Shown here piece after piece: positions 38,701 through 61,473 of a DNA stretch of 64,000 bases. Both the position numbers and the translations under genes were made by a program. Location: IMG/VR virus record IMGVR_UViG_3300042340_000379, positions 124,001 through 188,000 of that record; one strand, given 5' to 3'. The notes beneath the pieces were generated by a model. That model was not told the origin of the DNA. It did no database searches and worked only from the letters and a program-made list of their open reading frames with translations. Each line of letters begins with the position of its first letter. Positions within the stretch are counted from its first letter, which is position 1.

Positions 38701-41700
38701 GTATGGAGCTTCTACGCCAGCGAGTAAACATTAGAAAAAACCTTAACGAGAATGTTGGGCGGTTAAAAGAAGAGCAGCGCGTTATTAAAAAAACTCGTGA
38801 GAGAGTTTTTAAGCAAGAACGGGGTGCAAACTACCAAGCGTATAGACTTGATGGGCTTAGCCAAAGATATAACCATGCTCAAGCTGAGATATATGGTGCT
38901 AGAGATAACTCTCAACGAGAACTGAGAGAGCTAAATCCTGAACTCAATCGATTGCGCAAAGATACAAAATTTATGCAGCGGCAGTTTGTTCAAAACAAAC
39001 TTCACCAGTTTGTTGTTGAAGGCCAGCACGTTTCTATCTTTAACAAAGAATTTATTGCTGGAATTGGCGCACGCGATGGAGTTGTGCAAAGCGAGCTACG
39101 AAGCATGATTGCTCAAGCTCCTGAGGGATTTGTCGAAGGACTTAGCTCAGGAGAAATTTCAGACCAAAACTACTATGACAAGTTTGTGTCAGTTCTAAGT
39201 AAAGTAGACCAGCAAGGTCAAAACATCTACAGAGCTGAGCTGGCCGGAATTGAAAGCGCAATGGGCCACGCTCTTAGAGATGGCTCAGGTTCTAGAAGCG
39301 ATCAGCGTCAAATCAAAAAATACATGGGGCGGCGAGCTGCCTTTAACCAAACTCAGCAAATTGGGTTTGACTTCAAACCTCAAGAATTCGCTGCTCTTCA
39401 AAAGCTTCAATCACTGACTGGCTACGTTAACAGAGCGGGTGGCCCTAGCGGCGGCTCTATTGTTAACCAGCAGCACTCAATCCAAAACGTTGAGCGTCTA
39501 AAAAACAAACAAGTCTCTGAAGGCAACCAACTCTCACTAGCTCTTGATGGAAACCAGACCGCGCTAATTGTCTCAATGTATGGCCGGTTTGGCGTGCAGG
39601 GCGGTGACTTTGACGGTGACGCTTACCAGCTCGTCTTTGGATTTAGAGACATTCAAGAGTCCTTAGTTAAATCAATCAACAAACGGAATCAGATGGAAGA
39701 TTCCAAATTGGCCCTTGAGCTTGAAATGGGGAGCGGGGAATATGGCAGAGATGTTCTTTTGCGTCGAGCCCAGCTTAGCAACCAAATTCGAGTTGAACAA
39801 CAAGGAATTGACGGTCTAATCGGAAAACTTGATAACCAATTCCAAATGGCTGGAGAGCAGATAAGCCAAGGTGTTCGTCGTCACGTCTCTTCTTTAACAG
39901 GTGTTCCCTTGTCAATTATGTTGAACAAGGACGTGTACAGTGATGAACAAGTCTCTAATATGATCGAGCAGCAACGGGGGATTACGCCTGGCTTAACCGA
40001 CTTTGGAGATTCTTATGGTGGCGAGGCCACGTCTTACGGCTTCTTATTCAACGACATTAACCAAGACCTTGGAAGTCTAAACGGAAGTCTTGGAGATTAC
40101 CTAGACACTAAATTGGAAGGAAAGCCCTACGGATTAGACAAAGCTCAGCTTAGCCAATTTAAGCAGTTGACAGAAGAAGCCATGTCTAAACTTGACTTGG
40201 TAAACTCAAATGCTTCTGAACGAGCCCAAGCCTTTGGAGTAGAGTTGGGAACTCTAAATAACCTGCGCATGAGTTTGGATACCACCCAAAAGTTCATTCA
40301 GTCAGCGGCGGGTACAGTTCTTGACATGAAGTCTTTTGATTTAATGCAAGATGCAATTGGTTATGTGGGTACTTCTCTAATCGGGGAAGGCTACAACGCA
40401 ATCACCAGCATGATAGGCCGGTCTACCCTAGCGCGAACTTTAGCTCATGGACTTGGCGCTGAGTCAATGGTCGGCTTAGACACCGCAGCCCTAAATCTTG
40501 GAGGACAAATTCAAGAAAGACTTGATTATCTATTTGCTGGTGGAGAGAAAGCAAATACGTCCAGCAATATTAAAGAGAAGTTCGCAGTCGATGAGATAAA
40601 ACGCACCGCCTATTTTGCTCAAGAGAAAAGCCAACAAATTAGCGGTAAGCTGACCATGATTCAGCAAATGATCCGAGACTCTCTAAAACCCAAAGAGGCT
40701 GGAGGTCTTATTGGAGCCATAGTTGATAACTCTGCAGATGGGGAAGCGTTCAGAGAAAAGTTTGACCGACTAGAGAAAAAGGAAGAGCGTTTAGACGCGC
40801 TACGAAACTTTGTGTCTACTAGAGCCGTTACCTCAATGGTAGATACAAATGAGCGGGGGCTCATCAACGCTTTTGGTGCCATCTTCTTAATGGCTGATTA
40901 CACCAAGGAAAGTTCTCCTGAGAAAATGCTTAGCGACAAATCTGATCGCTATAGTGTTCTGCGCCAAACTCGAGAGCTATATGAAAAACAGTCTTCCAGG
41001 CTTCAGCAAGGTAAAGGTTTAAGTTCAGATTTAGATACTATCACGCGCCTCCGTCTTCAAGACCCAGAGTTTAGAGACAAGATGGTAAATGATGATGGGT
41101 TCCTAATCCGTCAGACCGTTGTTGACTTAATCAATAGTGCTACTGCACAAGAGACAACCTCCAAATACTTAGGTTACGATGCTAATGATAGAGTTAGACA
41201 AGCCAACGTAATAAGAGAACAGTACATTGGTGCTTTAGCATCAGAGCGTGGACTTCTCGATGCTTCGTCTGACTTCTACTTTAAAAACGAGCAGCATCAA
41301 ATGGCTATGATGAGTGCTCTTAATATCAAAGAACAGGACATTCTTGGCTATACTCAAGGCCAAGTTCAGAATGTATTTTCAGATAGTAATGCAGCTTTTA
41401 AAGCTTTAACGGAAAGAACATTTGTTGAGTCAACTTATCTAGGAATGGGACAGGAAGACTTAGAGTTCTCCAGAAATGTCATTCAGGCTGGTCGCTCCTT
41501 AGAGTTTATGGAGTTTGGGAACCAAATAGCATTTGCGCCTTTTGCAGCAGCTCAAAGCGAAAACCTTGTAGCTATAGAACAGTTAATGCGTCGGGGTAAA
41601 TTAGATGACCCTGCTTTAATGAGAGAGGTTCAAATCAACAGCTCGGCAAGATTGTTTGATGCAATCGCCAAGGTCAGCACAAAACTTACCTCTCAGTATG

Positions 41701-42854
41701 GTTCTTTAGAATCAGCCATTAGTAAAGAGGAAGTGTATAAAGGCTATTCTCAAATGGCAGAGCTGGCTGGAGTATTTGATGTTAGTCGTGATGAATCTAA
41801 CATGCTTTCTTTAGCCATGGCAGCTAAACCTGACGGTAAGCAGTCTATCTTCGAGCAGCTTGCTGATTTGTCAGCTGGTCGCGCTAATGTTGAAGAGAAA
41901 TATAACCAAATTTCAGATATTCACCAGGAAATGAGTACTGCTACTGGAACTCGTAAACAGTTTCTAGAGCAGCATCTAGCTCTACTTGAAGGTTCACTTG
42001 ACTCTTATAGACAAGGAATTTCAACAAATGACACCAGCGCAGTAAGAACCGCACTGGCTGAAATTGGAAATAAAGAACGTCAATTTAGAACTGATCAGTT
42101 TAAAAAAGACGAGCGCGGCAGGCGGCTATTAATTCATAGCGCTGGAATGATGCACGTCGCGTCAGGTTCTCAAAGTATGGGCGTGGTCAATACGCTTGGT
42201 CTGTTTGCAGCCCCTGTTGTTGGAGCTGCTCTTATGAGTGGCGCTGGATTAGATGAGCGGCTAGTCCTGGGCGGGTACGATTTAATGCAGGGTCTATCTA
42301 CAGCTGAAGGATTTGCGGATAACAAAATGGCTCAGGCGACTAACAGCATGTTTATCATGAGCCGATTACGCCAGCAAATGGCCGAGCAAGAAAGTCTATT
42401 TCTAGGTTCTGTAAAAGGCGTAGCGACAGAAGCACTTTACACAGGCCTAGCAGGGCTCGCCAGCCAAGCGTCCACCAGCCTTATGCGAGCAGCCGGGGCG
42501 CGGCAGGCAGCAGGAGGTTTAGGATCCGCACTTGCTGAAGCAGTCGTGACAGCGGCTGCTTTAGCTTTTTCTCGTAAAGGAAGCCAGTATGGCGTTCAAG
42601 ACGAGGATTACAGTAGTCTAATGGCGCAATCTTTGTTAGACATGGCTCAGTCTACAGAGAACATGATACAAGCTATGATTGAGAGGGCCCAAGACATTGA
42701 GGTCGAAACAGAAGACCAAATTGTCACGTTTGACTTTGATGCATCTATGGCACCCACAGAATATGAAGAGCGGGTGACTGCTGGGTGGATTGAGTTCTCT
42801 GTTGCCTCTGATGAGTTTGATTCTGTCTACTCTGAAATTGGAAATTACGCTTAA
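32772..42854 (+). CDS. Giant protein with two-barrel RNA polymerase motifs (putative virion RNA polymerase / ejected protein)
   Basis: 3360 aa; GGDFDGD (DFDGD at 39606-39620, residues 2279-2283) preceded by VNRAGGP; hydrophobic Gly/Ala-rich C-terminus; located among virion genes. Confidence 0.7.
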   Translation: MDPLFPELDPALIDNQNSEVREQIRRLEKSTPEDIARQELTTPDLNSIGISRGFRLHYGEVSDRPGTRYNMLGQKIYEPPTLAMESQVGFYEPVSVRANVSLDQSLQVRAVNAIDSINYGRSVLTGQQRTVTSGLNTMFGRQFRSLMYDQQVRAAGLMGLSREDTRALLGEPAVREGLYQDAGFRTPSLESIMENMGTGMPSAERISDINRMGFYADRYADPESVQKLYREVNQLKNALGDGIKSVEKRYAYRKVNGMYEKVLVGLKVGVRNYNDLFDGMGLYSGTSAPAVERETAFNFTVDSKGQVIELNTNRVISGSLMALGPSSISTIVGSSLIGGEGRRQSSSATALGLLATYARSSELEARHGVVDGVFNTMIAQGEYGALGRVFAEALVSRNEKYVASRGLKFGEVAGQMLSSVGHKDFKKGIHELIESISYRGLEYYSSLHTVFKESFDENTARMELFRNRQSLLTAAFDPLLNYTGGEGSRFDGLIDTTMKRVVDLIQSDSSTQRLKIAGQDVDISLFDDLKVAALNMSPTGRSAYDLRKSQVSRSILQLMMSPFLMPHESGYSGSQSSSRLGLFAMSETRGQRGMYELFAISPSKHTHGMKSTKPGEYYKPIGSQSAKSSVMKYIGGFYKFDDTAAKVAEFYETKTLFAGMPSLKRAKLDDIQIHMQKAGYKSSREIIEKYRAEMQLKEDKDIEVLLMPFRKPEQISQRLKNLVGGRPMLEIATGLRRAVMSQSGQQLRSYFSGGDYGVSLDVGKALSGNIPAALNDIQYQQMEQERSRIIAELGLDEKKITPRQQSELSRLLTSRMREIETQFNEGGGYIQGKAARLTMVGMGVNMLSDFMLVNQEYVNNTAFGYLHHSKFRVSATQNVRYEGVGRVTEADPYFDWKTNRLAEVFKAGTSIYLSPTPLKNERAMEILKKTAQSMRSEFLARGISKRESDAQVRRTLQSNFKFLESVDIKDGEVTNATMRAGAYSFDGNDMRFQGELVGSSLRLGMLPTNNRQRLGETGLSGATSLDFFDVKIPGVIRSVSKGLVTVANDINFAPSSGGYEADINFLVTSDIPSGSRSSSLTKGPWSMYESESFWARAREQAIQHSFVSKQTAQEGVFGILSPTAFKGYNYEAGLDILRDAESRRDLLAIPADQTAFLLGIAFMEKGEKGQRLKAAMREYAKTQSLGSSVGLLLEDVNSGSSIEKMRNLMLSTPDIIEFAGGQSLDQMGDYLAQRFETGDFDPIKKSLNRIVGKALDKSVQMEQYVEGQSSLVRTFQEGDFSVRSAGLVADVLNTTRQLIYGGMTVGDDPLQGYALVDKEKGARVDRFIEDKDFRAATLDIAQKMGVRSLLPSQLKLEGALSSLKEGDELYSQVESMLYLMHGHFSTSPLVARASNMLPSRILVAAGSEDAVALEFHYSLNLSKREFGMLRGTGVDIEKFTDLQAAYGVVATHGSANSTSRMMQVISPFSTDKTQAGVAKTMSRLIEGYNDFSGKFKFLGSVGNLSLLDEVVRSMVTGKTDRTLQLMASYDLANRALRHQKGLGQFTEQTVMNVAGAFNPGSLDLDSASFSQLADLANIYGVKGNTKEELAKGLRETGPILGRGIPYYGPSRNPFEIKRMAMARAVIDLSKRQKQKGHGSLVFGVTSDNEDVRDIMKRERLSAYGFGYSDFRQALDLVSDTQTGRLLSDGNGDKDHVQRIAGRLQDHDRSVELMMEKAAGTSDTESFVDVLYKVVSGAQQVIENTERGSDDYKRAERLRSEVYQTKSLLMPFVQTARDGSKGIISLYDPTEMGGQLRFTGTPAIRLGLDVLSKVPAQFEDHISEVVDRQRQIWEILPEFQSIMDRLTTGPIMDANLGEISVIEEMQRLAIQSQEDAALLFGSVMAQRSQGEKIKYPGVSFVAVADYLATPMEAFVGSRVMGTGLDQVVRDAQASLNGEERRNNRWEAERERLLKRAVTHSQSTEKSVQNKFKLAQRRRMELLRQRVNIRKNLNENVGRLKEEQRVIKKTRERVFKQERGANYQAYRLDGLSQRYNHAQAEIYGARDNSQRELRELNPELNRLRKDTKFMQRQFVQNKLHQFVVEGQHVSIFNKEFIAGIGARDGVVQSELRSMIAQAPEGFVEGLSSGEISDQNYYDKFVSVLSKVDQQGQNIYRAELAGIESAMGHALRDGSGSRSDQRQIKKYMGRRAAFNQTQQIGFDFKPQEFAALQKLQSLTGYVNRAGGPSGGSIVNQQHSIQNVERLKNKQVSEGNQLSLALDGNQTALIVSMYGRFGVQGGDFDGDAYQLVFGFRDIQESLVKSINKRNQMEDSKLALELEMGSGEYGRDVLLRRAQLSNQIRVEQQGIDGLIGKLDNQFQMAGEQISQGVRRHVSSLTGVPLSIMLNKDVYSDEQVSNMIEQQRGITPGLTDFGDSYGGEATSYGFLFNDINQDLGSLNGSLGDYLDTKLEGKPYGLDKAQLSQFKQLTEEAMSKLDLVNSNASERAQAFGVELGTLNNLRMSLDTTQKFIQSAAGTVLDMKSFDLMQDAIGYVGTSLIGEGYNAITSMIGRSTLARTLAHGLGAESMVGLDTAALNLGGQIQERLDYLFAGGEKANTSSNIKEKFAVDEIKRTAYFAQEKSQQISGKLTMIQQMIRDSLKPKEAGGLIGAIVDNSADGEAFREKFDRLEKKEERLDALRNFVSTRAVTSMVDTNERGLINAFGAIFLMADYTKESSPEKMLSDKSDRYSVLRQTRELYEKQSSRLQQGKGLSSDLDTITRLRLQDPEFRDKMVNDDGFLIRQTVVDLINSATAQETTSKYLGYDANDRVRQANVIREQYIGALASERGLLDASSDFYFKNEQHQMAMMSALNIKEQDILGYTQGQVQNVFSDSNAAFKALTERTFVESTYLGMGQEDLEFSRNVIQAGRSLEFMEFGNQIAFAPFAAAQSENLVAIEQLMRRGKLDDPALMREVQINSSARLFDAIAKVSTKLTSQYGSLESAISKEEVYKGYSQMAELAGVFDVSRDESNMLSLAMAAKPDGKQSIFEQLADLSAGRANVEEKYNQISDIHQEMSTATGTRKQFLEQHLALLEGSLDSYRQGISTNDTSAVRTALAEIGNKERQFRTDQFKKDERGRRLLIHSAGMMHVASGSQSMGVVNTLGLFAAPVVGAALMSGAGLDERLVLGGYDLMQGLSTAEGFADNKMAQATNSMFIMSRLRQQMAEQESLFLGSVKGVATEALYTGLAGLASQASTSLMRAAGARQAAGGLGSALAEAVVTAAALAFSRKGSQYGVQDEDYSSLMAQSLLDMAQSTENMIQAMIERAQDIEVETEDQIVTFDFDASMAPTEYEERVTAGWIEFSVASDEFDSVYSEIGNYA

Positions 42855-51144: not shown

Positions 51145-52200
51145 TTAGGCTCCCACTGTTACAGCATGTCGGTTTAAGTTATCCAATGCCATAATGTTAG
51201 CAAAATCAGGGTGCTGAGGAACATAAATTCCAGCATTTGCGGGAAGCCGACCTTTAAACAAGTAAGCACAGCCACCAAACAACATACGACCGGAAGTAGG
51301 AACAAACTGATTAAAGTTGTTTCGAATCTCACCTTGAACTAACTCAAAGAAGTTAGCAAGAGCATGCTTGGTAAGATCGGTGAAGTCGATCATCTCATTG
51401 TTGTCAGCAGGGTAAAAATAGGTAGAGCGCCCATTCTCTCCAGGAATAGGATTAGCCAGCGCAGTCATGACATCATCAAGGTCTAGTTGACCTCCAACAC
51501 GTTGGATCATCAAAGGATTGATTTTAATCATAGAAGCCAAAGCCTTACCACCAGCTAAAGTTGATCCTTTAACTCCATCATAGGAACTACGAAGTAGGAT
51601 GTTGTTGCGAGGGCCGATCGCAGTAATATCCAGTGTGCCGCCGCCAATGTCAGCGCCGATCACATTTCCGACAGAAGGAAGGTGGTTAAGTTCACGAGCC
51701 ATAATAATCGCGTCAACCCCTTCGGGCCGAGGAGCCTCAGGATAAATGCGAACTTTCATGTCAAATGTACCCTTGTCAGACGTATAGGTGTACTCAAAAG
51801 TATCAGTGAGTTTTTCGCGAAGGAACTCGCCTACAGTTCGGCCATCGGTTCGGCGCTTACTTGGGTCAGGTAGACTCCATTGAAGTACAACCTCGTAATT
51901 GGTTTTGTTTCCAATGGGGCCAAGAGTAGAAAGGAGAAAAGGAATAAAGTACTTGGGATCTAGCTTATCGCGGTTAACCAATCCACTCGCGGCGGCACCA
52001 TACTCAGAAGCGCGATCGCCAATATGAAAGCGACCAAAATCCCCCTCAACAATAATAGAGTCGCTGCCAGGGTCAATTGCGTCACCACCAGGAAAGATGG
52101 GAGCAACAATAGATTTTAGATAAATCGGCTGGGTGTGAATCCCATGACTAATAGCCAGAGTAGAAAAGTTGCCAACATCAATAGCGTGCTGAGTTTTCAT
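51145..52200 (-). CDS. parM: ParM/StbA-family actin-like ATPase
   Basis: Phosphate-1 AIDVGNFST, connect PEG, phosphate-2 ADIGGGTLD, adenosine LFGGCA, terminal P.FAN. Confidence 0.9.
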   Translation of the reverse strand: MKTQHAIDVGNFSTLAISHGIHTQPIYLKSIVAPIFPGGDAIDPGSDSIIVEGDFGRFHIGDRASEYGAAASGLVNRDKLDPKYFIPFLLSTLGPIGNKTNYEVVLQWSLPDPSKRRTDGRTVGEFLREKLTDTFEYTYTSDKGTFDMKVRIYPEAPRPEGVDAIIMARELNHLPSVGNVIGADIGGGTLDITAIGPRNNILLRSSYDGVKGSTLAGGKALASMIKINPLMIQRVGGQLDLDDVMTALANPIPGENGRSTYFYPADNNEMIDFTDLTKHALANFFELVQGEIRNNFNQFVPTSGRMLFGGCAYLFKGRLPANAGIYVPQHPDFANIMALDNLNRHAVTVGA

Positions 52201-52263
52201 ACAAAAATTTGGGTAATAAGTGTTCAACAGACTCCCTTAGTATAAGCTAAATTTTTGGGTTGT

Positions 52264-52986: not shown

Positions 52987-53114
52987 TAAGTATTTATACT
53001 TACGATCACAAAGCTGGAGAAAATATGACGCGGATTTTAAGAGACTATCTTTAACTAAGTATAAATACTTATGATCGCAAAGCTGGAGAAAATATGACGC
53101 GGATTTTAAGAGAC
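52987..53114. repeat. Tandem 59 bp direct repeat (69 bp period), each copy starting with a TAAGTAT-N2-ATACTTA palindrome
   Basis: Copies at 52987-53045 and 53056-53114 differ at 4 positions. Confidence 0.85.
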
Positions 53115-53852: not shown

Positions 53853-53914
53853 GGCCTTATATACACCCCCCTACACCATGGTGGTTTAACTAGGTTCGAT
53901 TCCTAGGTAGGGCC
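53853..53914 (+). ncRNA. tRNA-like element (acceptor-like stem plus T-arm, no canonical D-arm)
   Basis: GGCCTTAT/GTAGGGCC stem; CTAGG-TTCGATT-CCTAG T-arm. Confidence 0.4.
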
Positions 53915-53974: not shown

Positions 53975-54370
53975 ATGCAATCACTCACTTCCCTTACAGC
54001 AGAACGGGATTTTAAAAAGGCCTGTTCAGAAAAGTACCAAATGGTTTCCCTAGACAGGCGGCTTGTTTGTCAGGTAGCTCGAAAGCTACCTAAACAGCGC
54101 CGGATAAAAGCTATGGCCCACCTGCTAGAAGAGTACGGCAGGCAAGAGGCAGTTCCGACAGGCGAGCTAGTGGATAAGCTTTTTGCCCTGGATGCCGTTT
54201 ATAAAATTAACGACTTGGTAATCGGGGTAGATGTGACCCTCGATAAATCTCGAATTGTAGAAAAACGGCAAAAACTGTCTTCCTTATCTGAAGCCCACAA
54301 AGCTTTAGGTATCGACAGAACAATAGTGTTTTGTCCAAAGATCCATAAGGATCTTCAGTCTGCTCTCTAA
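53975..54370 (+). CDS. Hypothetical protein, possible PD-(D/E)xK-like fold
   Basis: GAGAACA leader; D.LFALD....IGVDVT...K pattern. Confidence 0.6.
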   Translation: MQSLTSLTAERDFKKACSEKYQMVSLDRRLVCQVARKLPKQRRIKAMAHLLEEYGRQEAVPTGELVDKLFALDAVYKINDLVIGVDVTLDKSRIVEKRQKLSSLSEAHKALGIDRTIVFCPKIHKDLQSAL

Positions 54371-54443
54371 ACCCTTTAATTCATAGCCGAGCCACAGGCT
54401 TAATTGTTCATGGCAAAACGCAAACATTACCTGGAGAACATCT

Positions 54444-54644
54444 ATGTCTTTTCATGGAATCTATTACAACCACGCCGCTTCAAACCAAGAGTGGATTCGT
54501 CGCTACACCAAAATTGTATGCATTGGCGCTTGTAAGTGCCAAGACGGGAAAAAGCGCGTGGCCTACATCGCCAGCTTTGGCGATCAGAACAAAGACTTCA
54601 TCCGCCGCAAAGAAGCTGAAGCTTGGATTCAATCTAAGCTCTAA
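54444..54644 (+). CDS. Small early-type hypothetical protein
   Basis: GGAGAACA RBS; 66 aa. Confidence 0.65.
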   Translation: MSFHGIYYNHAASNQEWIRRYTKIVCIGACKCQDGKKRVAYIASFGDQNKDFIRRKEAEAWIQSKL

Positions 54645-54662
54645 TCCCAATCTTTTTATCAT

Positions 54663-55216
54663 GCACGCCCAGTAAAGCCTGGGCTTTTTTGTGTCTAAAA
54701 CTATCTGGAGAACATCAAATGTCTACTCAAATCTTTTCCACTGCCCAAGCTTGCGCCGATGAAATCGCCAAGCTTCGCGCCCAGGGCGTTGCTTGCCGTC
54801 TTCAGAAAGTTGAAGGCGGTGGCTTCACCGTCGTTCTCATGAACGGTAAAGCCCAGCCTCAGAGCAAAACTAAAGCTAAAACTGATCCTGCTCCTCACAT
54901 CCAAATTCGCCAAACTCTCGATGGCGGCGTGTGGTGCAACAAGGGTGCAGGGTTCTACCCTGTCGTCAAGTTCACCTTGGATGAGGCTATCAAAGCTTTG
55001 ACTGATCGGTCTTACGTAAAGACCGACAAGAACCTGGATACGAAGAACTACAACACGACTTGGGAGTTTAGTCTTAAGTCTCTTGTAGAAAAGGATGAAG
55101 CTGAAGAGTGGGGCAATCAAAACGATATGGACGATGAGCTGTACATGAATCGCAACGGCCTCCTCTAGTCAACAACCTTTTATCACGCACGCCCAGTAAA
55201 GCCTGGGCTTTTTTGT
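54663..55216 (+). repeat. Intergenic repeat B: two identical 30 bp hairpin/T-run copies (54663-54692, 55187-55216)
   Basis: GCACGCCCAGTAAAGCCTGGGCTTTTTTGT. Confidence 0.9.
54719..55168 (+). CDS. Early-type hypothetical protein
   Basis: GGAGAACATCAA-ATG; 149 aa. Confidence 0.7.
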   Translation: MSTQIFSTAQACADEIAKLRAQGVACRLQKVEGGGFTVVLMNGKAQPQSKTKAKTDPAPHIQIRQTLDGGVWCNKGAGFYPVVKFTLDEAIKALTDRSYVKTDKNLDTKNYNTTWEFSLKSLVEKDEAEEWGNQNDMDDELYMNRNGLL

Positions 55217-55238
55217 ACTTATTTAGCGGAGAACTTCA

Positions 55239-55418
55239 ATGGCCCTCTTTCTCTTCATTCTCTTTTTCATTTCCCTCTGTCTTTTCTTTGCAGAGGACAA
55301 AGTAAGCCAACCCAGAATTACGCCTGACATGCTCCTTAGCAAAAAAGGCAAGCCTCTATATGGGGCAACTTTGCAGGCTCGCATCGAAAAGCTAGAGCGA
55401 GCTGGGTACATCCTTTAG
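55239..55418 (+). CDS. 59 aa membrane-anchored protein sharing a 31 aa motif with the downstream polymerase
   Basis: Not in the ORF track; GGAGAAC RBS; MALFLFILFFISLCLFFAEDKVSQPRITPDMLLSKKGKPLYGATLQARIEKLERAGYIL. Confidence 0.75.
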   Translation: MALFLFILFFISLCLFFAEDKVSQPRITPDMLLSKKGKPLYGATLQARIEKLERAGYIL

Positions 55419-55492
55419 TTCACAGCCGAGCCACAGGCTTAATTGTTCATGGCAATTTTCAAGCAACAACTAATCAACTGGAGAACAAACCC

Positions 55493-58400
55493 ATGAAATC
55501 CTTCACCAAATCTCTGAATTCTTTTGTTACCCGCTCCTTCTCTGTGGGTAAGCGCCAAATGATCTCTAAGGTCAAAATCGTTCACTCTAAGCGCGAGTTC
55601 ATCTCGCGTGTTTCTGGCACCTTTCGCCAGCGCTTGAACCCTGCTACTCCAAAGTCCATTTTTGCTTGGGACGATGTTCAGCTCTCCTTAGCCTTTACTT
55701 ATGGCCAAGGTTCTCTAGGAATCAAAGCTGACCGCGCCAACGCTGGCATTGGGTTTGGTAGTGATACCAAACCTAAATCTAAATCTGTTAAGTCCGATTC
55801 CATCAAAATCGCACACACCTTTAAGGAGATCCTCGCCCAAACCAAAGCTACCGCTGTCAAAGTCTTCGAGGCCATTTCCACCGTTTCTAAACTGATTACT
55901 CCCGATCTTCTGCTCTCTTCTACAGGTAAGCAGCTCTATGGAGCTGCTCTTAAAAACCGGATTGCCAAACTTGTTCGTGAGGGCTACGCAGCCCCTGTTT
56001 CTCAACCTGCAGCGGTAAAGGCCGTTGACTTCATGGCGCTTGCTCAAGAGCGCTGCGCCCAAAGCCTTGCTGCGATCGAAGCAGCTATGGGCTTCACATC
56101 CACGGGCACCGTTGTGGCCATGCTTCAATCCGGCCAGGAGCCTGCGCCCATTGCGCGGCAGTCCGCCTCAAATATGGAGAACATCTCATTGTTTGAACTC
56201 AGGGCAAAAGAATTTCCAGCTCCTTCTGTCGAGGAGCTAATGTCTGACCTAAATGGCGATCGCGCCACCCGCGCTGAAAAGTGCAAAGCCATCTTGGCTA
56301 AGCACAACCTCAACACAGTTGGTGAGCTGATCGCTCGCGGCATGGTGTCTCGCACCCGCAAAGACTTCTGGCTCGATAGTGCAAGCACTGCGTTCAGTGT
56401 GATGCTACTGGGCCACACTCTTGGCCAAATGCCCGCGCCTCTGGACTTCAAGGCTGGGAATACCTACCTGGTAGGTTTCCCTCTGTTTGATCGCACCTCT
56501 GGCGACAAGCAGATTTCCCCGTACAAGTGCGTCATAGGAGATATCGATCTCCTGATGGCGTCTGTTCGTAGAGAAGAGCACGACATAAAGAACCTATCTT
56601 CTCCTGCTACCAAGAAGGTGTTTAAGAAGCACTTTAAGGTGCTAGAAGATAACTGCAAAGCCCTGGGCCTGTGGTTGTCTAAGGACGAAGTGGCTAACAT
56701 GGCCGCTGCGTTGGCCATTAATGAAGTGGCTACCAAGCCCACCACTTTCGCGGTGCTGGCTTCCCACCTCTGCGAAGTCCTTGATGCTATGGGCATGATG
56801 CCCAACCGCGTGTATGCGGTGAATGCTGCGTGGAACCTTCCCCGCTACAAAGCGGATCGCGTTATTGTGCGTAAGTTGGTAACCGCACTGCTGCGGGCCC
56901 AAGAGGGCATCGGCATGACAGGGTTCAAGTTCATCGACATGTCCACCAGCGAGCAAACTGGTGAGCTATTTGATGAAGTCGTTATCTGTGGCCAACGCTT
57001 TGTCATGGATGACGAAGGCGTTATCTTTGATGACGCAGGTACATCAAAACGGCTAAACCAGATAATGTTGGCTGCTCCCATTAAGGTAGGCCGCAGTCTA
57101 CACCCCAACGAGTTCTCTATCTTGAGCGCTCACGACGTGTTGTTGTATCTGCTGGACAACATTGTGCTGCCCATGCTCAACCGAAAGGATGTCAAATCTG
57201 ACAAGAGCTTGGAAATCAGCCGTGTTGAGGAAACCAACGCTCGTGCTGCCCAGTCCATCAAATCGTTTATTGGCAAATCCATGCCTCTAAACGAGCGGGC
57301 TGTTGCGCTTGGTGTTGAAGATGCTGCCTCCAGCATTCTGACCAGCGGCGAAATCAGCTGCGTTGTCAAGTGGCATCAATCTCTCTTCCGTCGCAACATT
57401 GCGGCTGAGGGTTCAGCAGAGATCGCCATCTTCAAAGAAGGCATGCTAGTTGGGCCTGATAGTCCCTACAAACGCTCGGCTGATGCTACCGAGTATATGA
57501 TCTTTAGCCAAATGGAGTTAAAGACCTCCACCAATTTCACCGACTATCACCCTCTCATCGAGCCTATGATCGCTCATGGCAAAGTGATTCAGCCTTTTGG
57601 CAACATGAATGCTGTAAGCCTTTCTGCTCACGGTACTCACTATGCCAACCTTGATGTGAGCATTCAGAAAGAAGCTGTCAAAGCTTTCTGGGCTAACCAA
57701 GGCCTTGATGAGCAACAGCTGCGCTCTAAGTTCAACCTTGAAGGTGTAGTCGGTGATGTGTGGATGCACATTGCTGAAGAAACCCTCAACTTCTTGTCCT
57801 ACAAGGGCTCTAAGCGTTTCAAGCGCTCGGCTAACTTGTACGCTCAAGTCACCAGCTTCGCGTTTGAAGAGACCAGCCGCTTCCAGTGGTCTGGTCACGT
57901 TGATCACCAGATCACCGGCCTGGCGCTCAAGGCTGTGTTAGCTCCTAGCTACGTTTTCTCTGGGCCTGGTATGGCCTATATGAACTCGCACAAGCGTGCT
58001 CAATACGAGATGCGCTACCCCTTGGCTGGTGGCATGCATGACTACTACGATCGCGCTGCTGTGTTCAGTAACTTCGCGATTGATGATACTGCTATCATCA
58101 CCAATCCTCTCACGGGCTGGAGCCATATTGACCTGGACATCAAAGTCCGGGAAGGGCAGGAGACTGGCTTGTTTATCGTGAACGAACATGGCCATCAGGT
58201 TCCTCTAAAAGCTGAGCACAATGGTGTGCTTTGCAAAATTCGTTTCCGCACTGTCGATAAGTTCTCCGTTAACGGCGTATTGGAGTGTCGCCTCTTTTAT
58301 AAAGTGTCTGAGTACGACTTCAAACTGCGGGCTGGCTATAAAGCCATGACTACCTATCATGACGGGTCGATCTTTGACCATAACGCCTACGCTCCCGAGT

Positions 58401-60982
58401 GGGACATCATCATCCCTGGTGATGCCAACAAAACCCTCGACCTTTTAACTTGCTTCCTCCCCGAGGCTGCTGAGTCATTCGGTCGCGCTCCTGAGGGCAC
58501 TTTGGTTGATGGCGTTGATGTACGTGCCCTGCTGCGTTCACTTAATGCTGAGGCATTTGGTCGTGAGGGCATCATTAAAGATGCGCCCAACGACAGCCTC
58601 TATGTCAACATGCTCATGTTGAATGAGGGTCGCTACGAGCAACTCCGTAAGTTGTTCATGACCGCATTTGGTCAAGTTATATGGATGAGCGTTGAGTCTG
58701 TAGAAATGCAGATCTTTGTCAACAAATTCTATTCTGCCAACGTTGCTGGTGGTGGCAAATGGCGCGAGCTGTCTGAAGCTGAGCTGGAAACAGTTGCTAA
58801 AGATGGTCTACCCAAGGGTGCTCGCGGCTTCTGCGACACCGCTGATATCAATGACCAGAGCAACATTCTGGTTACCTACACTGAGAACGGGAAGTGCATG
58901 TCCCTTCACCGTCAGTGGGTCTACGCTTCCACGCCCGAGCTTGGCATGTACATGCTAGGTAAGCCTGAGTACACAACTGTGAGCCAGGCCGTTTCTGAAT
59001 CCAGCGTTATGGGCAACGTCATCTATGACCTGGCCCTACGTAGCAACAAAGCTGCGTTGGAATTCGTCAACCGTGGCGAAATCAACCGCGTGCGCTACTC
59101 TCTTATCCATCGCCTAGCAAAAGGCCTTCCTATTGCTATTGATGGCGGCGAAATTCCTGTGATGAAAATCCAGGGCTCGATCGCTGAAATCGTGGGTAGT
59201 TGCAGCGCCAACTTGGCTGCTGCATACGCGGAAGGGCCTAACCAGTTCTTCCAAGTACTCCTGGAAATCTGCCAGGACAAAGTGCTGCGCTTTGAAGCCG
59301 ACAACAGCACCTGGGTTAGCATCTACCTCCCTCTTCTCGCTTCTTACGGCGGGCAGGATCTTGAATCCAACGAAGGCATGACTCTTGCTAGCAAAGTCTA
59401 TGAGTTGATGACCTCTTGGTACAACGGGGCCGACCCTAAGTCTCAGGGCATCAAAGTCATCGCGGGGGAAATCTCCAAGATGATGAATAAGTTGGCCGAT
59501 GGTGGCCGGATGCAGAAGTCTTTGACCTACGGCCCTAAAGGCGTAGGTTTCAAGGTCGCCGCATTGCCCAACATTCCTACTGGGGAAGTGTGGGTCTATG
59601 CTGGCGGTGAAGTCTTTGCCAAAATGCGCAAGCTGTTTGGCAAAGACTTTGCTGAAAACGCCAAAACTGGCGATAGCTACATCGGTCTGGTGCGTGCGCC
59701 TATGACTCGTGTTGCTGTGCTCAAAGTCGTAGTCATCACCAAAGATGACAACCGCGCCTTGGCCTACAAACTCAATGGCGTGCAGGGCTACATCAGCCCA
59801 TTCTCCCAGTATTTCAACATGGGAGACTTTGACGGTGATGGTGACTTGTCTATGGACGTTAGTGATATCGTCCGTAGCGGTGAGCTTCAACAGGACTCTT
59901 TTGCGTCCATGCTCAAGTTCCAGCGGGAAACCCTGGGCTACGACATGATGCTACCCGAGTTCTGGAAGTCTGCTGCACCCGAGCAGTACTACGCCGACCA
60001 CTTCTATGTACAGAGCTACACCTCTGTCATGGCTAAAATCGGTGGGCGCGGCCTGAACTTGGAATCTTCCGAGAAGGCCAACGTCATCACCCGTGCTCAA
60101 CTGCTAGCCGGTGAGCACGGTGCAATCGGTCAGCAGACCGGCTATGTGTCCAGCTCATATCAAACCCAGTTCTTTATCACGCTGGCAGCTGAGATTCTGG
60201 GTCACCACAACGTAGCTGCATTCGAGTGGATTAAAGGCTCCACCTATCAAACCCAGGCCTTGTACGAAGTAGCGTTAGGCGGCTACTCTCCTGATATGTG
60301 CCGCGTGGCGTTTGGTCTTCTTGACCGCGCCTTCCGTTTGAGCACCACTCAAGATTGGTGGCTAAAGCGTGTTGACGCTGAGGTTGCCGGTATGTTGCTT
60401 GACGGTACCAAGCACACAGCTTCTTCTCTCCTAGGTACCGAGCCTATGGATAAAGAGAAGACCCTGTTCACTTCCCTGAGTGAAGGCCAAGTGTTCCCCG
60501 CAATGCAGGCTTGCGGTTTTGGCTGGAATGGCTTTGAGGATGACCGCAACCAAGTGCAACAGTTTGTTAAAGCTGCTGCGCTCGCTGGCGTTGCTAAAAA
60601 GCGTGTCAGCGAAATCAAGAACGATGATGCTGGAATTGGTAGCGGCACCTACCAAAAGCTGGTGAAAACCTACGGCAAGAACATGGCCCTTGTCATGTGT
60701 CTTGCTCAACGTCTAATGGACATCAGCCGTAATAAGGCTGAGTTTGGTAAGGACTACGACAACGAACTCCGCGCTGAACTCGACCAAATGCTCAAAGGTG
60801 TTAAAAGCGATTCTATTTCCGTCGATCTCTATCGTCGGATTGAGAAGACCCTAGACGACTCTGTGTCCGCAGAAGTCGTAAGCTATGACAGCGCTGCTAT
60901 CAACAAGCTTTGCCGCTTTGTTGAAACCGAAGACGCTGCTCCCATTACTCTGGAGGTTGCTGCCCAAGTTATCGCCAATTAA
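55493..60982 (+). CDS. Single-chain two-barrel DNA-dependent RNA polymerase candidate (non-virion / early)
   Basis: 1829 aa; beta'-like LVRAP and NMGDFDGD (DFDGD at 59825-59839, residues 1445-1449); beta-like FKLRAGYKAM...WDIIIP; GGAGAACA RBS. Confidence 0.8.
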   Translation: MKSFTKSLNSFVTRSFSVGKRQMISKVKIVHSKREFISRVSGTFRQRLNPATPKSIFAWDDVQLSLAFTYGQGSLGIKADRANAGIGFGSDTKPKSKSVKSDSIKIAHTFKEILAQTKATAVKVFEAISTVSKLITPDLLLSSTGKQLYGAALKNRIAKLVREGYAAPVSQPAAVKAVDFMALAQERCAQSLAAIEAAMGFTSTGTVVAMLQSGQEPAPIARQSASNMENISLFELRAKEFPAPSVEELMSDLNGDRATRAEKCKAILAKHNLNTVGELIARGMVSRTRKDFWLDSASTAFSVMLLGHTLGQMPAPLDFKAGNTYLVGFPLFDRTSGDKQISPYKCVIGDIDLLMASVRREEHDIKNLSSPATKKVFKKHFKVLEDNCKALGLWLSKDEVANMAAALAINEVATKPTTFAVLASHLCEVLDAMGMMPNRVYAVNAAWNLPRYKADRVIVRKLVTALLRAQEGIGMTGFKFIDMSTSEQTGELFDEVVICGQRFVMDDEGVIFDDAGTSKRLNQIMLAAPIKVGRSLHPNEFSILSAHDVLLYLLDNIVLPMLNRKDVKSDKSLEISRVEETNARAAQSIKSFIGKSMPLNERAVALGVEDAASSILTSGEISCVVKWHQSLFRRNIAAEGSAEIAIFKEGMLVGPDSPYKRSADATEYMIFSQMELKTSTNFTDYHPLIEPMIAHGKVIQPFGNMNAVSLSAHGTHYANLDVSIQKEAVKAFWANQGLDEQQLRSKFNLEGVVGDVWMHIAEETLNFLSYKGSKRFKRSANLYAQVTSFAFEETSRFQWSGHVDHQITGLALKAVLAPSYVFSGPGMAYMNSHKRAQYEMRYPLAGGMHDYYDRAAVFSNFAIDDTAIITNPLTGWSHIDLDIKVREGQETGLFIVNEHGHQVPLKAEHNGVLCKIRFRTVDKFSVNGVLECRLFYKVSEYDFKLRAGYKAMTTYHDGSIFDHNAYAPEWDIIIPGDANKTLDLLTCFLPEAAESFGRAPEGTLVDGVDVRALLRSLNAEAFGREGIIKDAPNDSLYVNMLMLNEGRYEQLRKLFMTAFGQVIWMSVESVEMQIFVNKFYSANVAGGGKWRELSEAELETVAKDGLPKGARGFCDTADINDQSNILVTYTENGKCMSLHRQWVYASTPELGMYMLGKPEYTTVSQAVSESSVMGNVIYDLALRSNKAALEFVNRGEINRVRYSLIHRLAKGLPIAIDGGEIPVMKIQGSIAEIVGSCSANLAAAYAEGPNQFFQVLLEICQDKVLRFEADNSTWVSIYLPLLASYGGQDLESNEGMTLASKVYELMTSWYNGADPKSQGIKVIAGEISKMMNKLADGGRMQKSLTYGPKGVGFKVAALPNIPTGEVWVYAGGEVFAKMRKLFGKDFAENAKTGDSYIGLVRAPMTRVAVLKVVVITKDDNRALAYKLNGVQGYISPFSQYFNMGDFDGDGDLSMDVSDIVRSGELQQDSFASMLKFQRETLGYDMMLPEFWKSAAPEQYYADHFYVQSYTSVMAKIGGRGLNLESSEKANVITRAQLLAGEHGAIGQQTGYVSSSYQTQFFITLAAEILGHHNVAAFEWIKGSTYQTQALYEVALGGYSPDMCRVAFGLLDRAFRLSTTQDWWLKRVDAEVAGMLLDGTKHTASSLLGTEPMDKEKTLFTSLSEGQVFPAMQACGFGWNGFEDDRNQVQQFVKAAALAGVAKKRVSEIKNDDAGIGSGTYQKLVKTYGKNMALVMCLAQRLMDISRNKAEFGKDYDNELRAELDQMLKGVKSDSISVDLYRRIEKTLDDSVSAEVVSYDSAAINKLCRFVETEDAAPITLEVAAQVIAN

Positions 60983-60987
60983 TCGCT

Positions 60988-61141
60988 AGGGCCCTATAGG
61001 GCCCGCAAAAGTCCGATTGGGGCCCAACGCGGGCCCTTTACGTCCCGTGAAAGTCCTTTTAGGGCCCGCGTTGGGCCTTTCATGTCCCGTCGAGGGCCCT
61101 AAACGTCCCGCAAAAGTCCGATTAGGGCCCGTCAAGGGCCC
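60988..61141. repeat. parC-like array 2: phased GGGCCC/GTCCC boxes, inverted relative to array 1
   Basis: AAAGTCCGATTAGGGCCCG is the exact reverse complement of CGGGCCCTAATCGGACTTT at 52284-52302; 10-11 bp period. Confidence 0.75.
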
Positions 61142-61473
61142 AACCCCTATTTTGCTGCGCTCTACCCTGCGCGGTTAGAGGGGGAATGTTAGTTTTATTT
61201 GTTTGTTGTTAGCAGGTTTAGCTAATGGCAGTGGGTCTGTGTGTTATGCGGTTGGGCGGCAGGATGTAGATGCTAATAGGTATTTATGGCAGCACTATTA
61301 TTTAATTGGAGCCTGGTCGCAGCGATCGCGCTGTGTATCTGGCTCGACAAATGATTTGCCGACTGCCGTCCCCTGTGCGCGATGCGTTGGGACGGCAGCG
61401 GGAGAAAGAAACGCAAATTGCCGTGACTTAATGTCCGGCAGTTTGTAATCCGTTGAATTAGAGACTTGCTGCT

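What the first reader, a model, noticed from the sequence alone, without database searches (positions are those of the whole stretch)
55239..55987. Unannotated 59 aa membrane protein carries a copy of a 31 aa segment of the polymerase N-terminus
Seen in sequence: ITPDMLLSKKGKPLYGATLQARIEKLERAGY (55317-55409) versus ITPDLLLSSTGKQLYGAALKNRIAKLVREGY (55895-55987, polymerase residues 135-165), 21 of 31 identical with no gaps. In the small protein the segment follows a hydrophobic N-terminal helix. Inference: a small interaction module. The mini-protein could tether the polymerase or a partner to a membrane by homotypic binding, or act as a decoy for a host factor or defence sensor recognising this segment.
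Basis: partly seen in the sequence, partly recalled or inferred. Interest (0 to 1): 0.7.

Follow-up and report, generated by a model that had tools for sequence, protein, structure and literature searches.

The report
Portable mini-domain shared by membrane anchor and polymerase
A 59-residue membrane-anchored protein of a lake cyanophage ends in a conserved 35-residue basic mini-domain that also sits in the variable N-terminal part of the neighbouring giant RNA-polymerase-like protein. The same mini-domain recurs in other uncultured phages, so it is a real, selected and apparently undescribed module whose binding partner is unknown.

Summary
The two segments share 21 of 31 residues without gaps (E 7e-12).

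It is not a recent or neutral duplication:
- Only 53 of 93 bases agree.
- Third codon positions agree at 6 of 31.
- Only 4 of the 21 conserved residues use the same codon.
- 0 of 200,000 neutral simulations reached 21 identities.

An exhaustive profile search of 1.84 billion proteins found the segment at the extreme C-terminus of about a dozen small metagenomic phage proteins. Most have a hydrophobic anchor, an acidic linker of 4-111 residues, then the basic module. One is a DUF559 nuclease and one a small soluble basic protein.

A module-bearing gene lies directly upstream of a second module-bearing gene, or of the polymerase gene, in four separate loci.

The polymerase N-terminus is a conserved head (residues 1-89) followed by a swappable cassette. 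Here the cassette holds the module; relatives hold a basic helix-turn-helix-like element there.

AlphaFold2 models the module confidently (pLDDT 90) as strand, short helix, Gly-rich basic loop, long helix, strand. No known fold or family matched it.

My best reading is a portable docking module for one shared ligand, most likely nucleic acid, with the small protein as its membrane-tethered version. Homotypic binding could be neither supported nor excluded.

The parts
55163..55216 (+). Repeat D1b. Intrinsic-terminator-like hairpin (stem 55191-55208) plus T-run, ending the upstream 150-aa gene. Its twin D1a is at 54639-54692.
   Evidence: 39 of the 54 nt are 97% identical between the two copies; only two copies in the genome.
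55228..55234 (+). GGAGAAC Shine-Dalgarno-like element, 4 nt before the ATG of the small ORF.
   Evidence: the same heptamer lies 4-6 nt before the starts of the neighbouring genes at 54444, 54719 and 55493.
55239..55418 (+). 59-aa gene: N-terminal membrane anchor plus C-terminal module.
55239..55295 (+). Hydrophobic anchor, residues 1-19, encoded by a C/T-rich tract.
   Evidence: KD 2.55. Family members have equivalent anchors of unrelated sequence, so the anchor is a protein-level feature.
55317..55409 (+). Module copy 1 (residues 27-57).
55407..55455 (+). Repeat D2b. It overlaps the last three codons and the stop of the small ORF. Its twin D2a is at 54368-54416, behind the 131-aa gene.
   Evidence: 92-95% identical; only two copies in the genome.
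55480..55486 (+). GGAGAAC element before the large ORF.
55493..60982 (+). 1829-aa probable YonO-like (two-barrel) RNA polymerase.
   Evidence: DFDGD lies at residues 1445-1449 (nt 59825-59839) and is invariant, with VRAPMTR, in four homologues.
55493..55759 (+). Conserved N-terminal 'head' of the large protein (residues 1-89, ending in GIGFG).
   Evidence: 43% identical to the polymerase N-terminus in L016; homology stops at GIGFG.
55760..55987 (+). Variable cassette of the large protein (residues 90-165), which ends with the module.
   Evidence: Relatives carry a different basic cassette here. In run X6, 55758-55961 is replaced in frame by 448 nt.
55895..55987 (+). Module copy 2 (polymerase residues 135-165).

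Best explanation
What it is (about 0.9 confidence). The 59-aa ORF is a genuine gene of a roughly 208-kb freshwater cyanomyovirus. It encodes a single-pass protein with an N-terminal anchor and a cytoplasmic tail. The tail is a ~35-residue basic mini-domain: strand, short helix, Gly-rich Lys-rich loop, long amphipathic helix, strand.

The mini-domain defines a small family confined, as far as seen, to uncultured phages. It nearly always forms the extreme C-terminus of its carrier. Carriers are membrane anchors with acidic linkers of 4-111 residues, a DUF559 nuclease and a small basic soluble protein. In this phage it is also embedded in the swappable N-terminal cassette of a YonO-like polymerase.

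How it most likely works (inferred, about 0.4). The mini-domain is a portable docking module that recognises one common ligand in the infected cell, most probably nucleic acid (phage DNA or nascent RNA). Each carrier is thereby brought to the same place. In the polymerase the module does the job that basic helix-turn-helix-like cassettes do in its relatives, namely template or promoter engagement. The 59-aa protein is the membrane-tethered version. It pins the same ligand, and thus the polymerase's template, to the cytoplasmic face of a membrane, much as phi29 p16.7 and p1 anchor replication.

Shown: the family, selection, gene pairing, cassette position and predicted fold. Inferred: topology, ligand and tethering.
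For: Selection
- First and second codon positions agree at 24/31 and 23/31; the third at 6/31.
- pS 0.92 (saturated) and pN 0.26.
- 0 of 200,000 neutral simulations reached 21 identities.

Family
- 19 proteins had E<=0.001 among 1.84 billion. About 12 are clear members, with the module at the C-terminus.
- The two copies here are no closer to each other (21/31) than to copies in other phages (24/31 each).

Anchor and charge
- 12 members have a hydrophobic 19-mer, and long linkers are strongly acidic.
- The last 36 residues have pI about 10. In several short members basic residues follow the anchor, which suggests a cytoplasmic tail.

Gene pairing
- Ours: the 59-aa gene, then the polymerase.
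- L016: DUF559+module, then the polymerase homologue.
- L015 and L017: anchored module protein, then soluble module protein. This is conserved at 38-41% identity.

Cassette
- Homology to the L016 polymerase ends at GIGFG.
- L016, P0004 and P0002 carry a basic 'ARARxxGV' element instead.
- The X6 strain's replacement starts at the same residue.

Fold
- pLDDT 90.2 from a 14-sequence alignment.

Analogy for a nucleic-acid module
- Atlas clusters of RdRP/YonO-like proteins carry Rho_N. HTH/sigma-r4-bearing viral proteins of about 900 aa appear among the structural neighbours of one such hit.
- One carrier is a nuclease.
- phi29 precedent: PMC4974454.
Against: - No direct evidence for nucleic-acid binding. 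There were no significant Pfam, PHROG or PDB-fold matches. The HTH_24 hit is E 0.024-0.054, below threshold, and covers only the last helix.
- The four longer anchored members have a basic stretch before the anchor, so their topology is ambiguous.
- A related phage with this polymerase family (G001, 87% complete) shows no module at all, so the polymerase does not need it.
- No RNA data were available.
- Gene pairing fits homotypic binding equally well.
Confidence: 0.4

Rival explanations
1. Homotypic docking. Module copies bind one another, so the anchored protein recruits the polymerase to the membrane. In other phages it would recruit the nuclease or the small basic protein.
For: - Two module-bearing genes are adjacent in three loci, and a module gene is adjacent to the polymerase in a fourth.
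- The module sits at a flexible terminus after long linkers, as docking domains often do.
Against: - Complex prediction of the two copies gave ipSAE 0.00 and ipTM 0.04. The tool calls this 'no answer', not evidence against.
- AlphaFold2 folds the module confidently as a monomer.
- By position, the hydrophobic residues appear to pack inside the monomer, and the conserved exposed residues are basic (S14, K18, R28, K31) (inference).
- In L016 the polymerase lacks the module while its upstream neighbour has it.
Confidence: 0.22
2. Competitor or decoy. The anchored module competes with the polymerase's own module for the same site on DNA, on the polymerase body or on a host factor. It would act as a timing switch or a shield against a host sensor.
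For: - Same module, adjacent genes.
- Both the small-gene slot and the polymerase cassette differ in the related strain in run X6, while the flanks are about 99% identical. This is compatible with coupled, fast-evolving partners.
Against: - The module itself is strongly conserved (about 60-77% identity across phages), not diversifying.
- No host homologue or defence context was found.
- The X6 sequences that replace the two regions could not be read.
Confidence: 0.13
3. Lysis-type small membrane protein (holin or antiholin-like), whose charged tail merely resembles the polymerase segment.
For: - It is small, with one anchor and a basic C-terminal tail.
- One family member (P0009) lies about 400 bp from an M15 endolysin and a holin-like gene, though on the other strand.
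Against: - The same module occurs in soluble cytoplasmic enzymes.
- Here the gene sits among early-type small genes beside the polymerase, not beside a lysin.
Confidence: 0.05
4. Non-functional ORF or neutral remnant of a duplication of the polymerase 5' end.
For: - The anchor is encoded by a C/T-rich low-complexity tract.
- The last three codons and the stop lie inside a repeated intergenic element.
Against: - Synonymous sites are saturated while the protein is conserved.
- Homologues with the same architecture occur in other phages.
- A canonical GGAGAAC-N4-ATG start is shared with the neighbouring genes.
- The sequence is intact and identical in eight lake metagenome runs from 2020-2024.
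Confidence: 0.03

Closest known systems
phi29 p16.7 and p1 (membrane proteins that anchor the phage replication machinery and DNA)
   Same: A small early phage protein with an N-terminal membrane anchor and a cytoplasmic C-terminal part that binds nucleic acid and/or a component of the polymerase machinery (PMC4974454).
   Different: - No sequence relation was detected.
- The module here is only about 35 residues.
- It is shared in cis with a polymerase-like enzyme and with a nuclease.
- It concerns a YonO-like RNA polymerase, not protein-primed DNA replication.
- Binding is not demonstrated.
YonO-like single-chain two-barrel RNA polymerases of phages (SPbeta YonO; PF05183 relatives)
   Same: The large protein has the invariant DFDGD triad and a VRAPMTR element. 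Its nearest ESM-Atlas clusters carry PF05183. YonO-like proteins are known from prophages and cyanobacteria (PMC5467207; PMC7824862).
   Different: - It is twice as long.
- The PF05183 HMM does not match.
- There is no homologue among GenBank phages and only three distinct relatives in 5.8 billion proteins.
- Relatives are fused to a RecD-like helicase and to NADAR plus Macro domains.
Small helical nucleic-acid modules appended to polymerases (Rho_N/SAP-like, sigma region 4 / HTH_23, winged helix)
   Same: Comparable size, basic character and two-helix core. They sit at a terminus of YonO-like enzymes in other clusters. The last helix and strand weakly resemble the recognition helix and wing start of HTH_24.
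   Different: - No model reaches its threshold.
- The loop between the helices is 9 residues long and Gly/Lys-rich.
- The first helix of a winged helix is missing.
- Foldseek and VIA-align found no convincing match.
PeSL promoter/stem-loop cassettes of T4-type phages
   Same: Short conserved intergenic elements (D1 terminator, D2) flank small accessory genes. They coincide with rearrangement joints in a related strain (PMC2839356 and PMC4122927).
   Different: - There are only two copies of each element, both local.
- No sigma-70-like promoter was detected in them.
- The joints rest on 31-32-nt flanks in metagenome contigs.

Membership tests
YonO-like / RdRP-type two-barrel RNA polymerase (PF05183) | DxDGD metal-binding aspartate triad in the beta'-like double-psi beta-barrel | tested here: met
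   NMGDFDGDG at residues 1442-1450 is invariant in all four homologues, preceded by an invariant VRAPMTR.
YonO-like / RdRP-type two-barrel RNA polymerase (PF05183) | Significant match to the family HMM | tested here: not met
   No PF05183 hit at E<=0.1 on the protein or at E<=10 on the genome. No PDB sequence hit.
YonO-like / RdRP-type two-barrel RNA polymerase (PF05183) | Two double-psi beta-barrels forming one active site (fold) | tested here: inconclusive
   The AlphaFold2 model of residues 880-1720 with 4 sequences had mean pLDDT 41.7 and was unusable. ESM-Atlas feature search: 66 of 100 nearest clusters are in the PF05183 set, scores 0.92, with 178-179 shared features.
YonO-like / RdRP-type two-barrel RNA polymerase (PF05183) | Template-dependent RNA synthesis | not testable with these tools
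   Needs biochemistry.
Winged helix-turn-helix (HTH_24 and kin) | Three-helix bundle plus wing; HMM match above threshold | tested here: not met
   Best E 0.024, 14.7 bits against a cut-off of 21.9, covering only profile positions 32-47. Only 3 of 14 members hit. The model has two helices.
SAP / Rho_N / helix-hairpin-helix modules | HMM match or fold match | tested here: not met
   None was listed at E<=10 for any of 14 members. No such fold appeared among the Foldseek or VIA matches. The resemblance in Gly spacing is by eye only.
phi29 p16.7-type membrane anchor of phage nucleic-acid machinery (functional class) | N-terminal transmembrane anchor with a cytoplasmic C-terminal binding domain | tested here: inconclusive
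   The anchor is present (KD 2.55). In several short members basic residues follow the anchor, and the module has pI about 10, both suggesting a tail inside the cell. Topology and binding are not measured. No sequence homology was found.
Holins | Small membrane protein encoded with an endolysin and controlling lysis | tested here: not met
   No lysin is adjacent in the window. The module is shared with soluble enzymes.
New module family (this report) | Core pattern I-T-P-[DE]-h-L-L-S-x-x-G-K-x-L-x-G-x-A-x-x-x-R-I-x-K-L-x-x-x-G-Y at or near a C-terminus | tested here: met
   Both window copies score 96 and 87 bits against the two-copy profile. They score 78 and 69 bits against the 14-member profile. 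Invariant positions are S, L, G, L, G.

The most novel reading that the evidence does not exclude
The mini-domain is an 'address tag' of a previously unseen phage system. Membrane-anchored copies nucleate a membrane-bound transcription and DNA-processing site in infected cyanobacteria. A giant YonO-like RNA polymerase, a nuclease and a small basic protein are recruited to it through the same tag. The tag and its anchor are exchanged together as cassettes between strains.
Probability: 0.2. Interest if true: 0.8.

Novelty: new variant of a known kind. Interest (0 to 1): 0.6.

Why it matters
- How single-chain YonO-like polymerases find their templates or promoters is unknown (PMC5467207). A swappable N-terminal cassette, together with a stand-alone membrane-tethered copy of the same module, gives a concrete and testable handle on that question.
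- It would also be a first hint that a freshwater cyanophage organises transcription at a membrane.
- The module is short, folds confidently in silico and matched nothing in Pfam or PHROGs. It could therefore be defined as a new domain family from about a dozen sequences.
- If instead it simply binds DNA non-specifically, the finding is a modest addition to the list of small phage DNA-binding modules.

Tried and rejected
- Close relatives in IMG/VR. Searches with the small protein, the polymerase N-terminus, the motif alignment, P0012 and P0018 found none. The full alignment A5 was too diverse for the pattern search.
- Word-index protein searches. The small protein found only itself. The first 300 residues of the polymerase found nothing, so the X6 variant could not be recovered. 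The X6 loose-end sequence is not in IMG/VR.
- Metagenome scan with the catalytic alignment: nothing.
- Genome scan with the motif. Two hits in Clostridia MAGs are transglutaminase-like lipoproteins that share only ITPELLLSKKG. I rejected them as chance.
- GenBank phages have no motif and no polymerase homologue.
The one related IMG/VR record (G001) has no module.
- The polymerase core model was too poor to search with.
- Complex prediction gave no answer.
- No RNA runs were listed. All other DNA runs carry the identical sequence, so no population pN/pS could be computed.
- tRNA scan near a T-arm-like sequence at 53892: none.
- Ribbon-helix-helix, LysM and helix-hairpin-helix readings were considered by eye and dropped, because element lengths do not fit.

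Full report
SETTING

The window is bases 124,001-188,000 of a 207,855-bp IMG/VR virus record estimated at 97% complete. It carries myovirus structural genes: capsid E-type, Mu-type portal and tail sheath. It also carries an Alp7A-like actin.
- The capsid's only GenBank phage relatives are Microcystis and Microcoleus phages of the Ma-LMM01 type, at about 30% identity.
- The octamer GCGATCGC is the commonest 8-mer, with 37 copies against 2 expected. By my own knowledge this octamer is the cyanobacterial HIP1 palindrome.
- Near-identical DNA is held by nine lake-water or other metagenome runs from 2020-2024.

I therefore treat it as a large freshwater cyanophage.

THE OBSERVATION

The 59-aa ORF (55239-55418) and the 1829-aa ORF (55493-60982) share a gap-free 31-residue segment with 21 identities.
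- E is 7e-12 for the pair and 8.4e-9 against the whole genome in six frames.
- No third copy exists in the genome.

At the DNA level only 53 of 93 bases agree. Codon positions 1, 2 and 3 agree at 24, 23 and 6 of 31. Only 4 of the 21 conserved residues use the same codon, and one Ser is AGC in one copy and TCT in the other. Nei-Gojobori pS is 0.92 (saturated) and pN is 0.26. None of 200,000 simulations that placed the same number of random substitutions on one copy kept 21 residues; the mean was 9.3 and the maximum 17.

The likeness is therefore maintained at the protein level in both reading frames. Both are translated and selected, and a recent neutral duplication is excluded.

THE SMALL GENE LOOKS LIKE A GENE
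- It follows a terminator-like hairpin with a T-run.
- It starts with GGAGAAC-N4-ATG, the same element found 4-6 nt before its three neighbours.
- The identical protein is already in the public collection, with NCBI, JGI/IMG and ENA as sources, so 'unannotated' is not accurate.
- In eight runs the region is base-for-base identical.

A FAMILY

A profile of the two copies was scored against all 1.84 billion representatives. It returned 19 proteins at E<=0.001. About twelve are clear members.
- Eight are small proteins that begin with a hydrophobic anchor.
- Three are 164-173 aa proteins with an internal anchor.
- One is a DUF559 (Vsr-like) nuclease.
- One is a 103-aa basic soluble protein.

In every one the module is the extreme C-terminus, followed by only 0-6 residues. 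The consensus is K-x-ITPDLLLSKxGKPLxGAAxxARIxKLxREGY, with S, L, G, L and G invariant.

Linkers between anchor and module run from 4 to 111 residues and are strongly acidic when long. The last 36 residues have pI about 10.

The two copies in this genome (21/31) are no closer to each other than to copies elsewhere. The small one matches P0007 at 24/31. The polymerase one matches the 63-aa anchored protein P0006 at 24/31, or 27/36 with flanks.

Pfam, PHROGs, GenBank phages and the PDB gave no significant match.

FOLD

With the 14-sequence alignment AlphaFold2 gives mean pLDDT 90.2. The model has a strand at the ITP, a short helix (residues 9-12 of the 39), a 9-residue Gly/Lys-rich loop, a helix at 22-35 and a closing strand at GY(I/V).

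GENE PAIRING
- In contig L015 the anchored member P0012 is followed 300 nt later by a homologue of the soluble member P0018, and both carry the module.
- In L017 a 183-aa homologue of P0012 (38% identity, E 5e-24, with a diverged module) precedes P0018 itself.
- In L016 the contig shares Alp7A-like and PolyA_pol genes with the polymerase relatives' contigs. There the DUF559+module gene is immediately followed by the N-terminus of a polymerase homologue.
- With the present locus, that makes four cases. In each, a module-bearing gene sits directly upstream of a second module-bearing gene or of the polymerase gene.

THE LARGE PROTEIN

It has three distinct relatives among 5.8 billion proteins, at 34-44% identity. 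All share VRAPMTR and NMGDFDGDG, the aspartate-triad signature of two-barrel RNA polymerases (PMC7824862; PMC5467207). Its nearest ESM-Atlas clusters carry PF05183, with scores of 0.92 and 178-179 shared features.

The PF05183 HMM itself does not match, and my structure model was unusable at pLDDT 41.7. 'YonO-like polymerase' is therefore probable, not shown.

Two relatives carry an N-terminal RecD-like helicase and C-terminal NADAR and Macro domains.

WHERE THE MODULE SITS IN THE LARGE PROTEIN

Residues 1-92 align with the L016 homologue (43% identity, E 5e-13), and the homology stops at GIGFG, residues 85-89. Beyond that point L016, P0004 and P0002 carry a very basic stretch with a shared 'ARARxxGV...LL.MGD' helix-turn-helix-like element. 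This phage instead carries a 45-residue helical linker and the module.

In run X6 a related strain is about 99% identical in the flanks. Its contig replaces 55758-55961 with 448 other bases. That keeps the frame (+82 codons), starts at the last Gly of GIGFG and ends inside the module's long helix. The small-ORF slot (55213-55479) is also occupied by unrelated sequence that brings its own GGAGAAC. I could not retrieve those sequences.

The polymerase N-terminus is thus a conserved head plus an exchangeable cassette, and the module is one cassette type.

MECHANISM

I take the module to be a portable docking unit for a single shared ligand. Nucleic acid is the most likely ligand, for these reasons:
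- The module is basic, and its conserved exposed positions are Ser, Lys and Arg.
- Long acidic linkers accompany it.
- One carrier is a nuclease.
- In the polymerase it occupies the slot that basic HTH-like elements fill in relatives.
- Other YonO-like clusters carry Rho_N, and HTH/sigma-r4-bearing viral proteins are among the structural neighbours of one such hit.

On this reading the 59-aa protein holds the same ligand at a membrane, in the manner of phi29 p16.7 and p1. This is inference, and I put it at about 0.4.

Homotypic docking (0.22) fits the gene pairing equally well. The only test I could run returned 'no answer'. The competitor/decoy (0.13), lysis (0.05) and non-functional (0.03) readings are less likely, for the reasons given under the rival explanations.

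NOVELTY

The module and its family appear undescribed. The concept of a small membrane anchor for phage nucleic-acid machinery is known. Sharing one mini-domain between such an anchor and a YonO-like polymerase, inside a swappable cassette, is new as far as I could find.

Noticed in passing
whole genome (G000); e.g. window 56264: GCGATCGC is the most frequent 8-mer, 37 copies against about 2 expected. By my own knowledge this is the cyanobacterial HIP1 palindrome. Together with capsid relatives only in Microcystis and Microcoleus phages, this points to a cyanobacterial host.
   Followed up: partly
window 60985-61200, about 52300, and several places beyond the window (genome 188986-191100): Intergenic arrays of about 21-nt units containing TAGGGCCC/GGGCCC: 33 copies on the + strand and 22 on the - strand. 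One array lies right after the polymerase stop. Another lies beside the Alp7A-like actin gene (51145-52227), where a centromere-like repeat for a segregation system might be expected.
   Followed up: no
window 54368-54416 / 55407-55455 (D2) and 54639-54692 / 55163-55216 (D1): Two pairs of near-identical intergenic elements bracket the small genes in the order g131-D2-g66-D1-g150-D1-g59-D2-polymerase. Run X6 shows joints 54431>55183 and 54700>55422 at these elements. This suggests PeSL-like cassette shuffling, but the flanks are only 31-32 nt.
   Followed up: partly
window 53000-53114: A 46-nt direct repeat (96% identical, 69 nt apart) that includes a GGAGAAAATATG start region. It looks like a small tandem duplication of a gene start.
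   Followed up: no
P0024 versus polymerase residues 1385-1462 (window about 59645-59880): A 96%-identical strain variant has a dense patch of substitutions around the active site, including DFDGD to DLDGD. This suggests a recombined patch in an otherwise identical gene.
   Followed up: no
L005/L008 (P0004, P0003): Polymerase homologues in related phages are fused to an N-terminal RecD-like helicase (AAA_30, UvrD_C_2) and to C-terminal NADAR and Macro domains. This hints at ADP-ribose processing coupled to the polymerase.
   Followed up: no
window 32772-42854: A 3360-aa ORF with no Pfam match, in the structural/early boundary region. It may be a giant virion or ejection protein.
   Followed up: no
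P0017 (228 aa, metagenomic): Carries two copies of only the first half of the module (LLSKGGKPLYG.AYQ.R), within a Gly-rich repeat protein. The loop part may be a functional sub-motif in its own right.
   Followed up: no
P0002 residues about 130-260 (L003): The N-terminal cassette of this polymerase homologue has Cys pairs (CxxC ... CC) next to the basic region. This may be a zinc-ribbon variant of the cassette.
   Followed up: no
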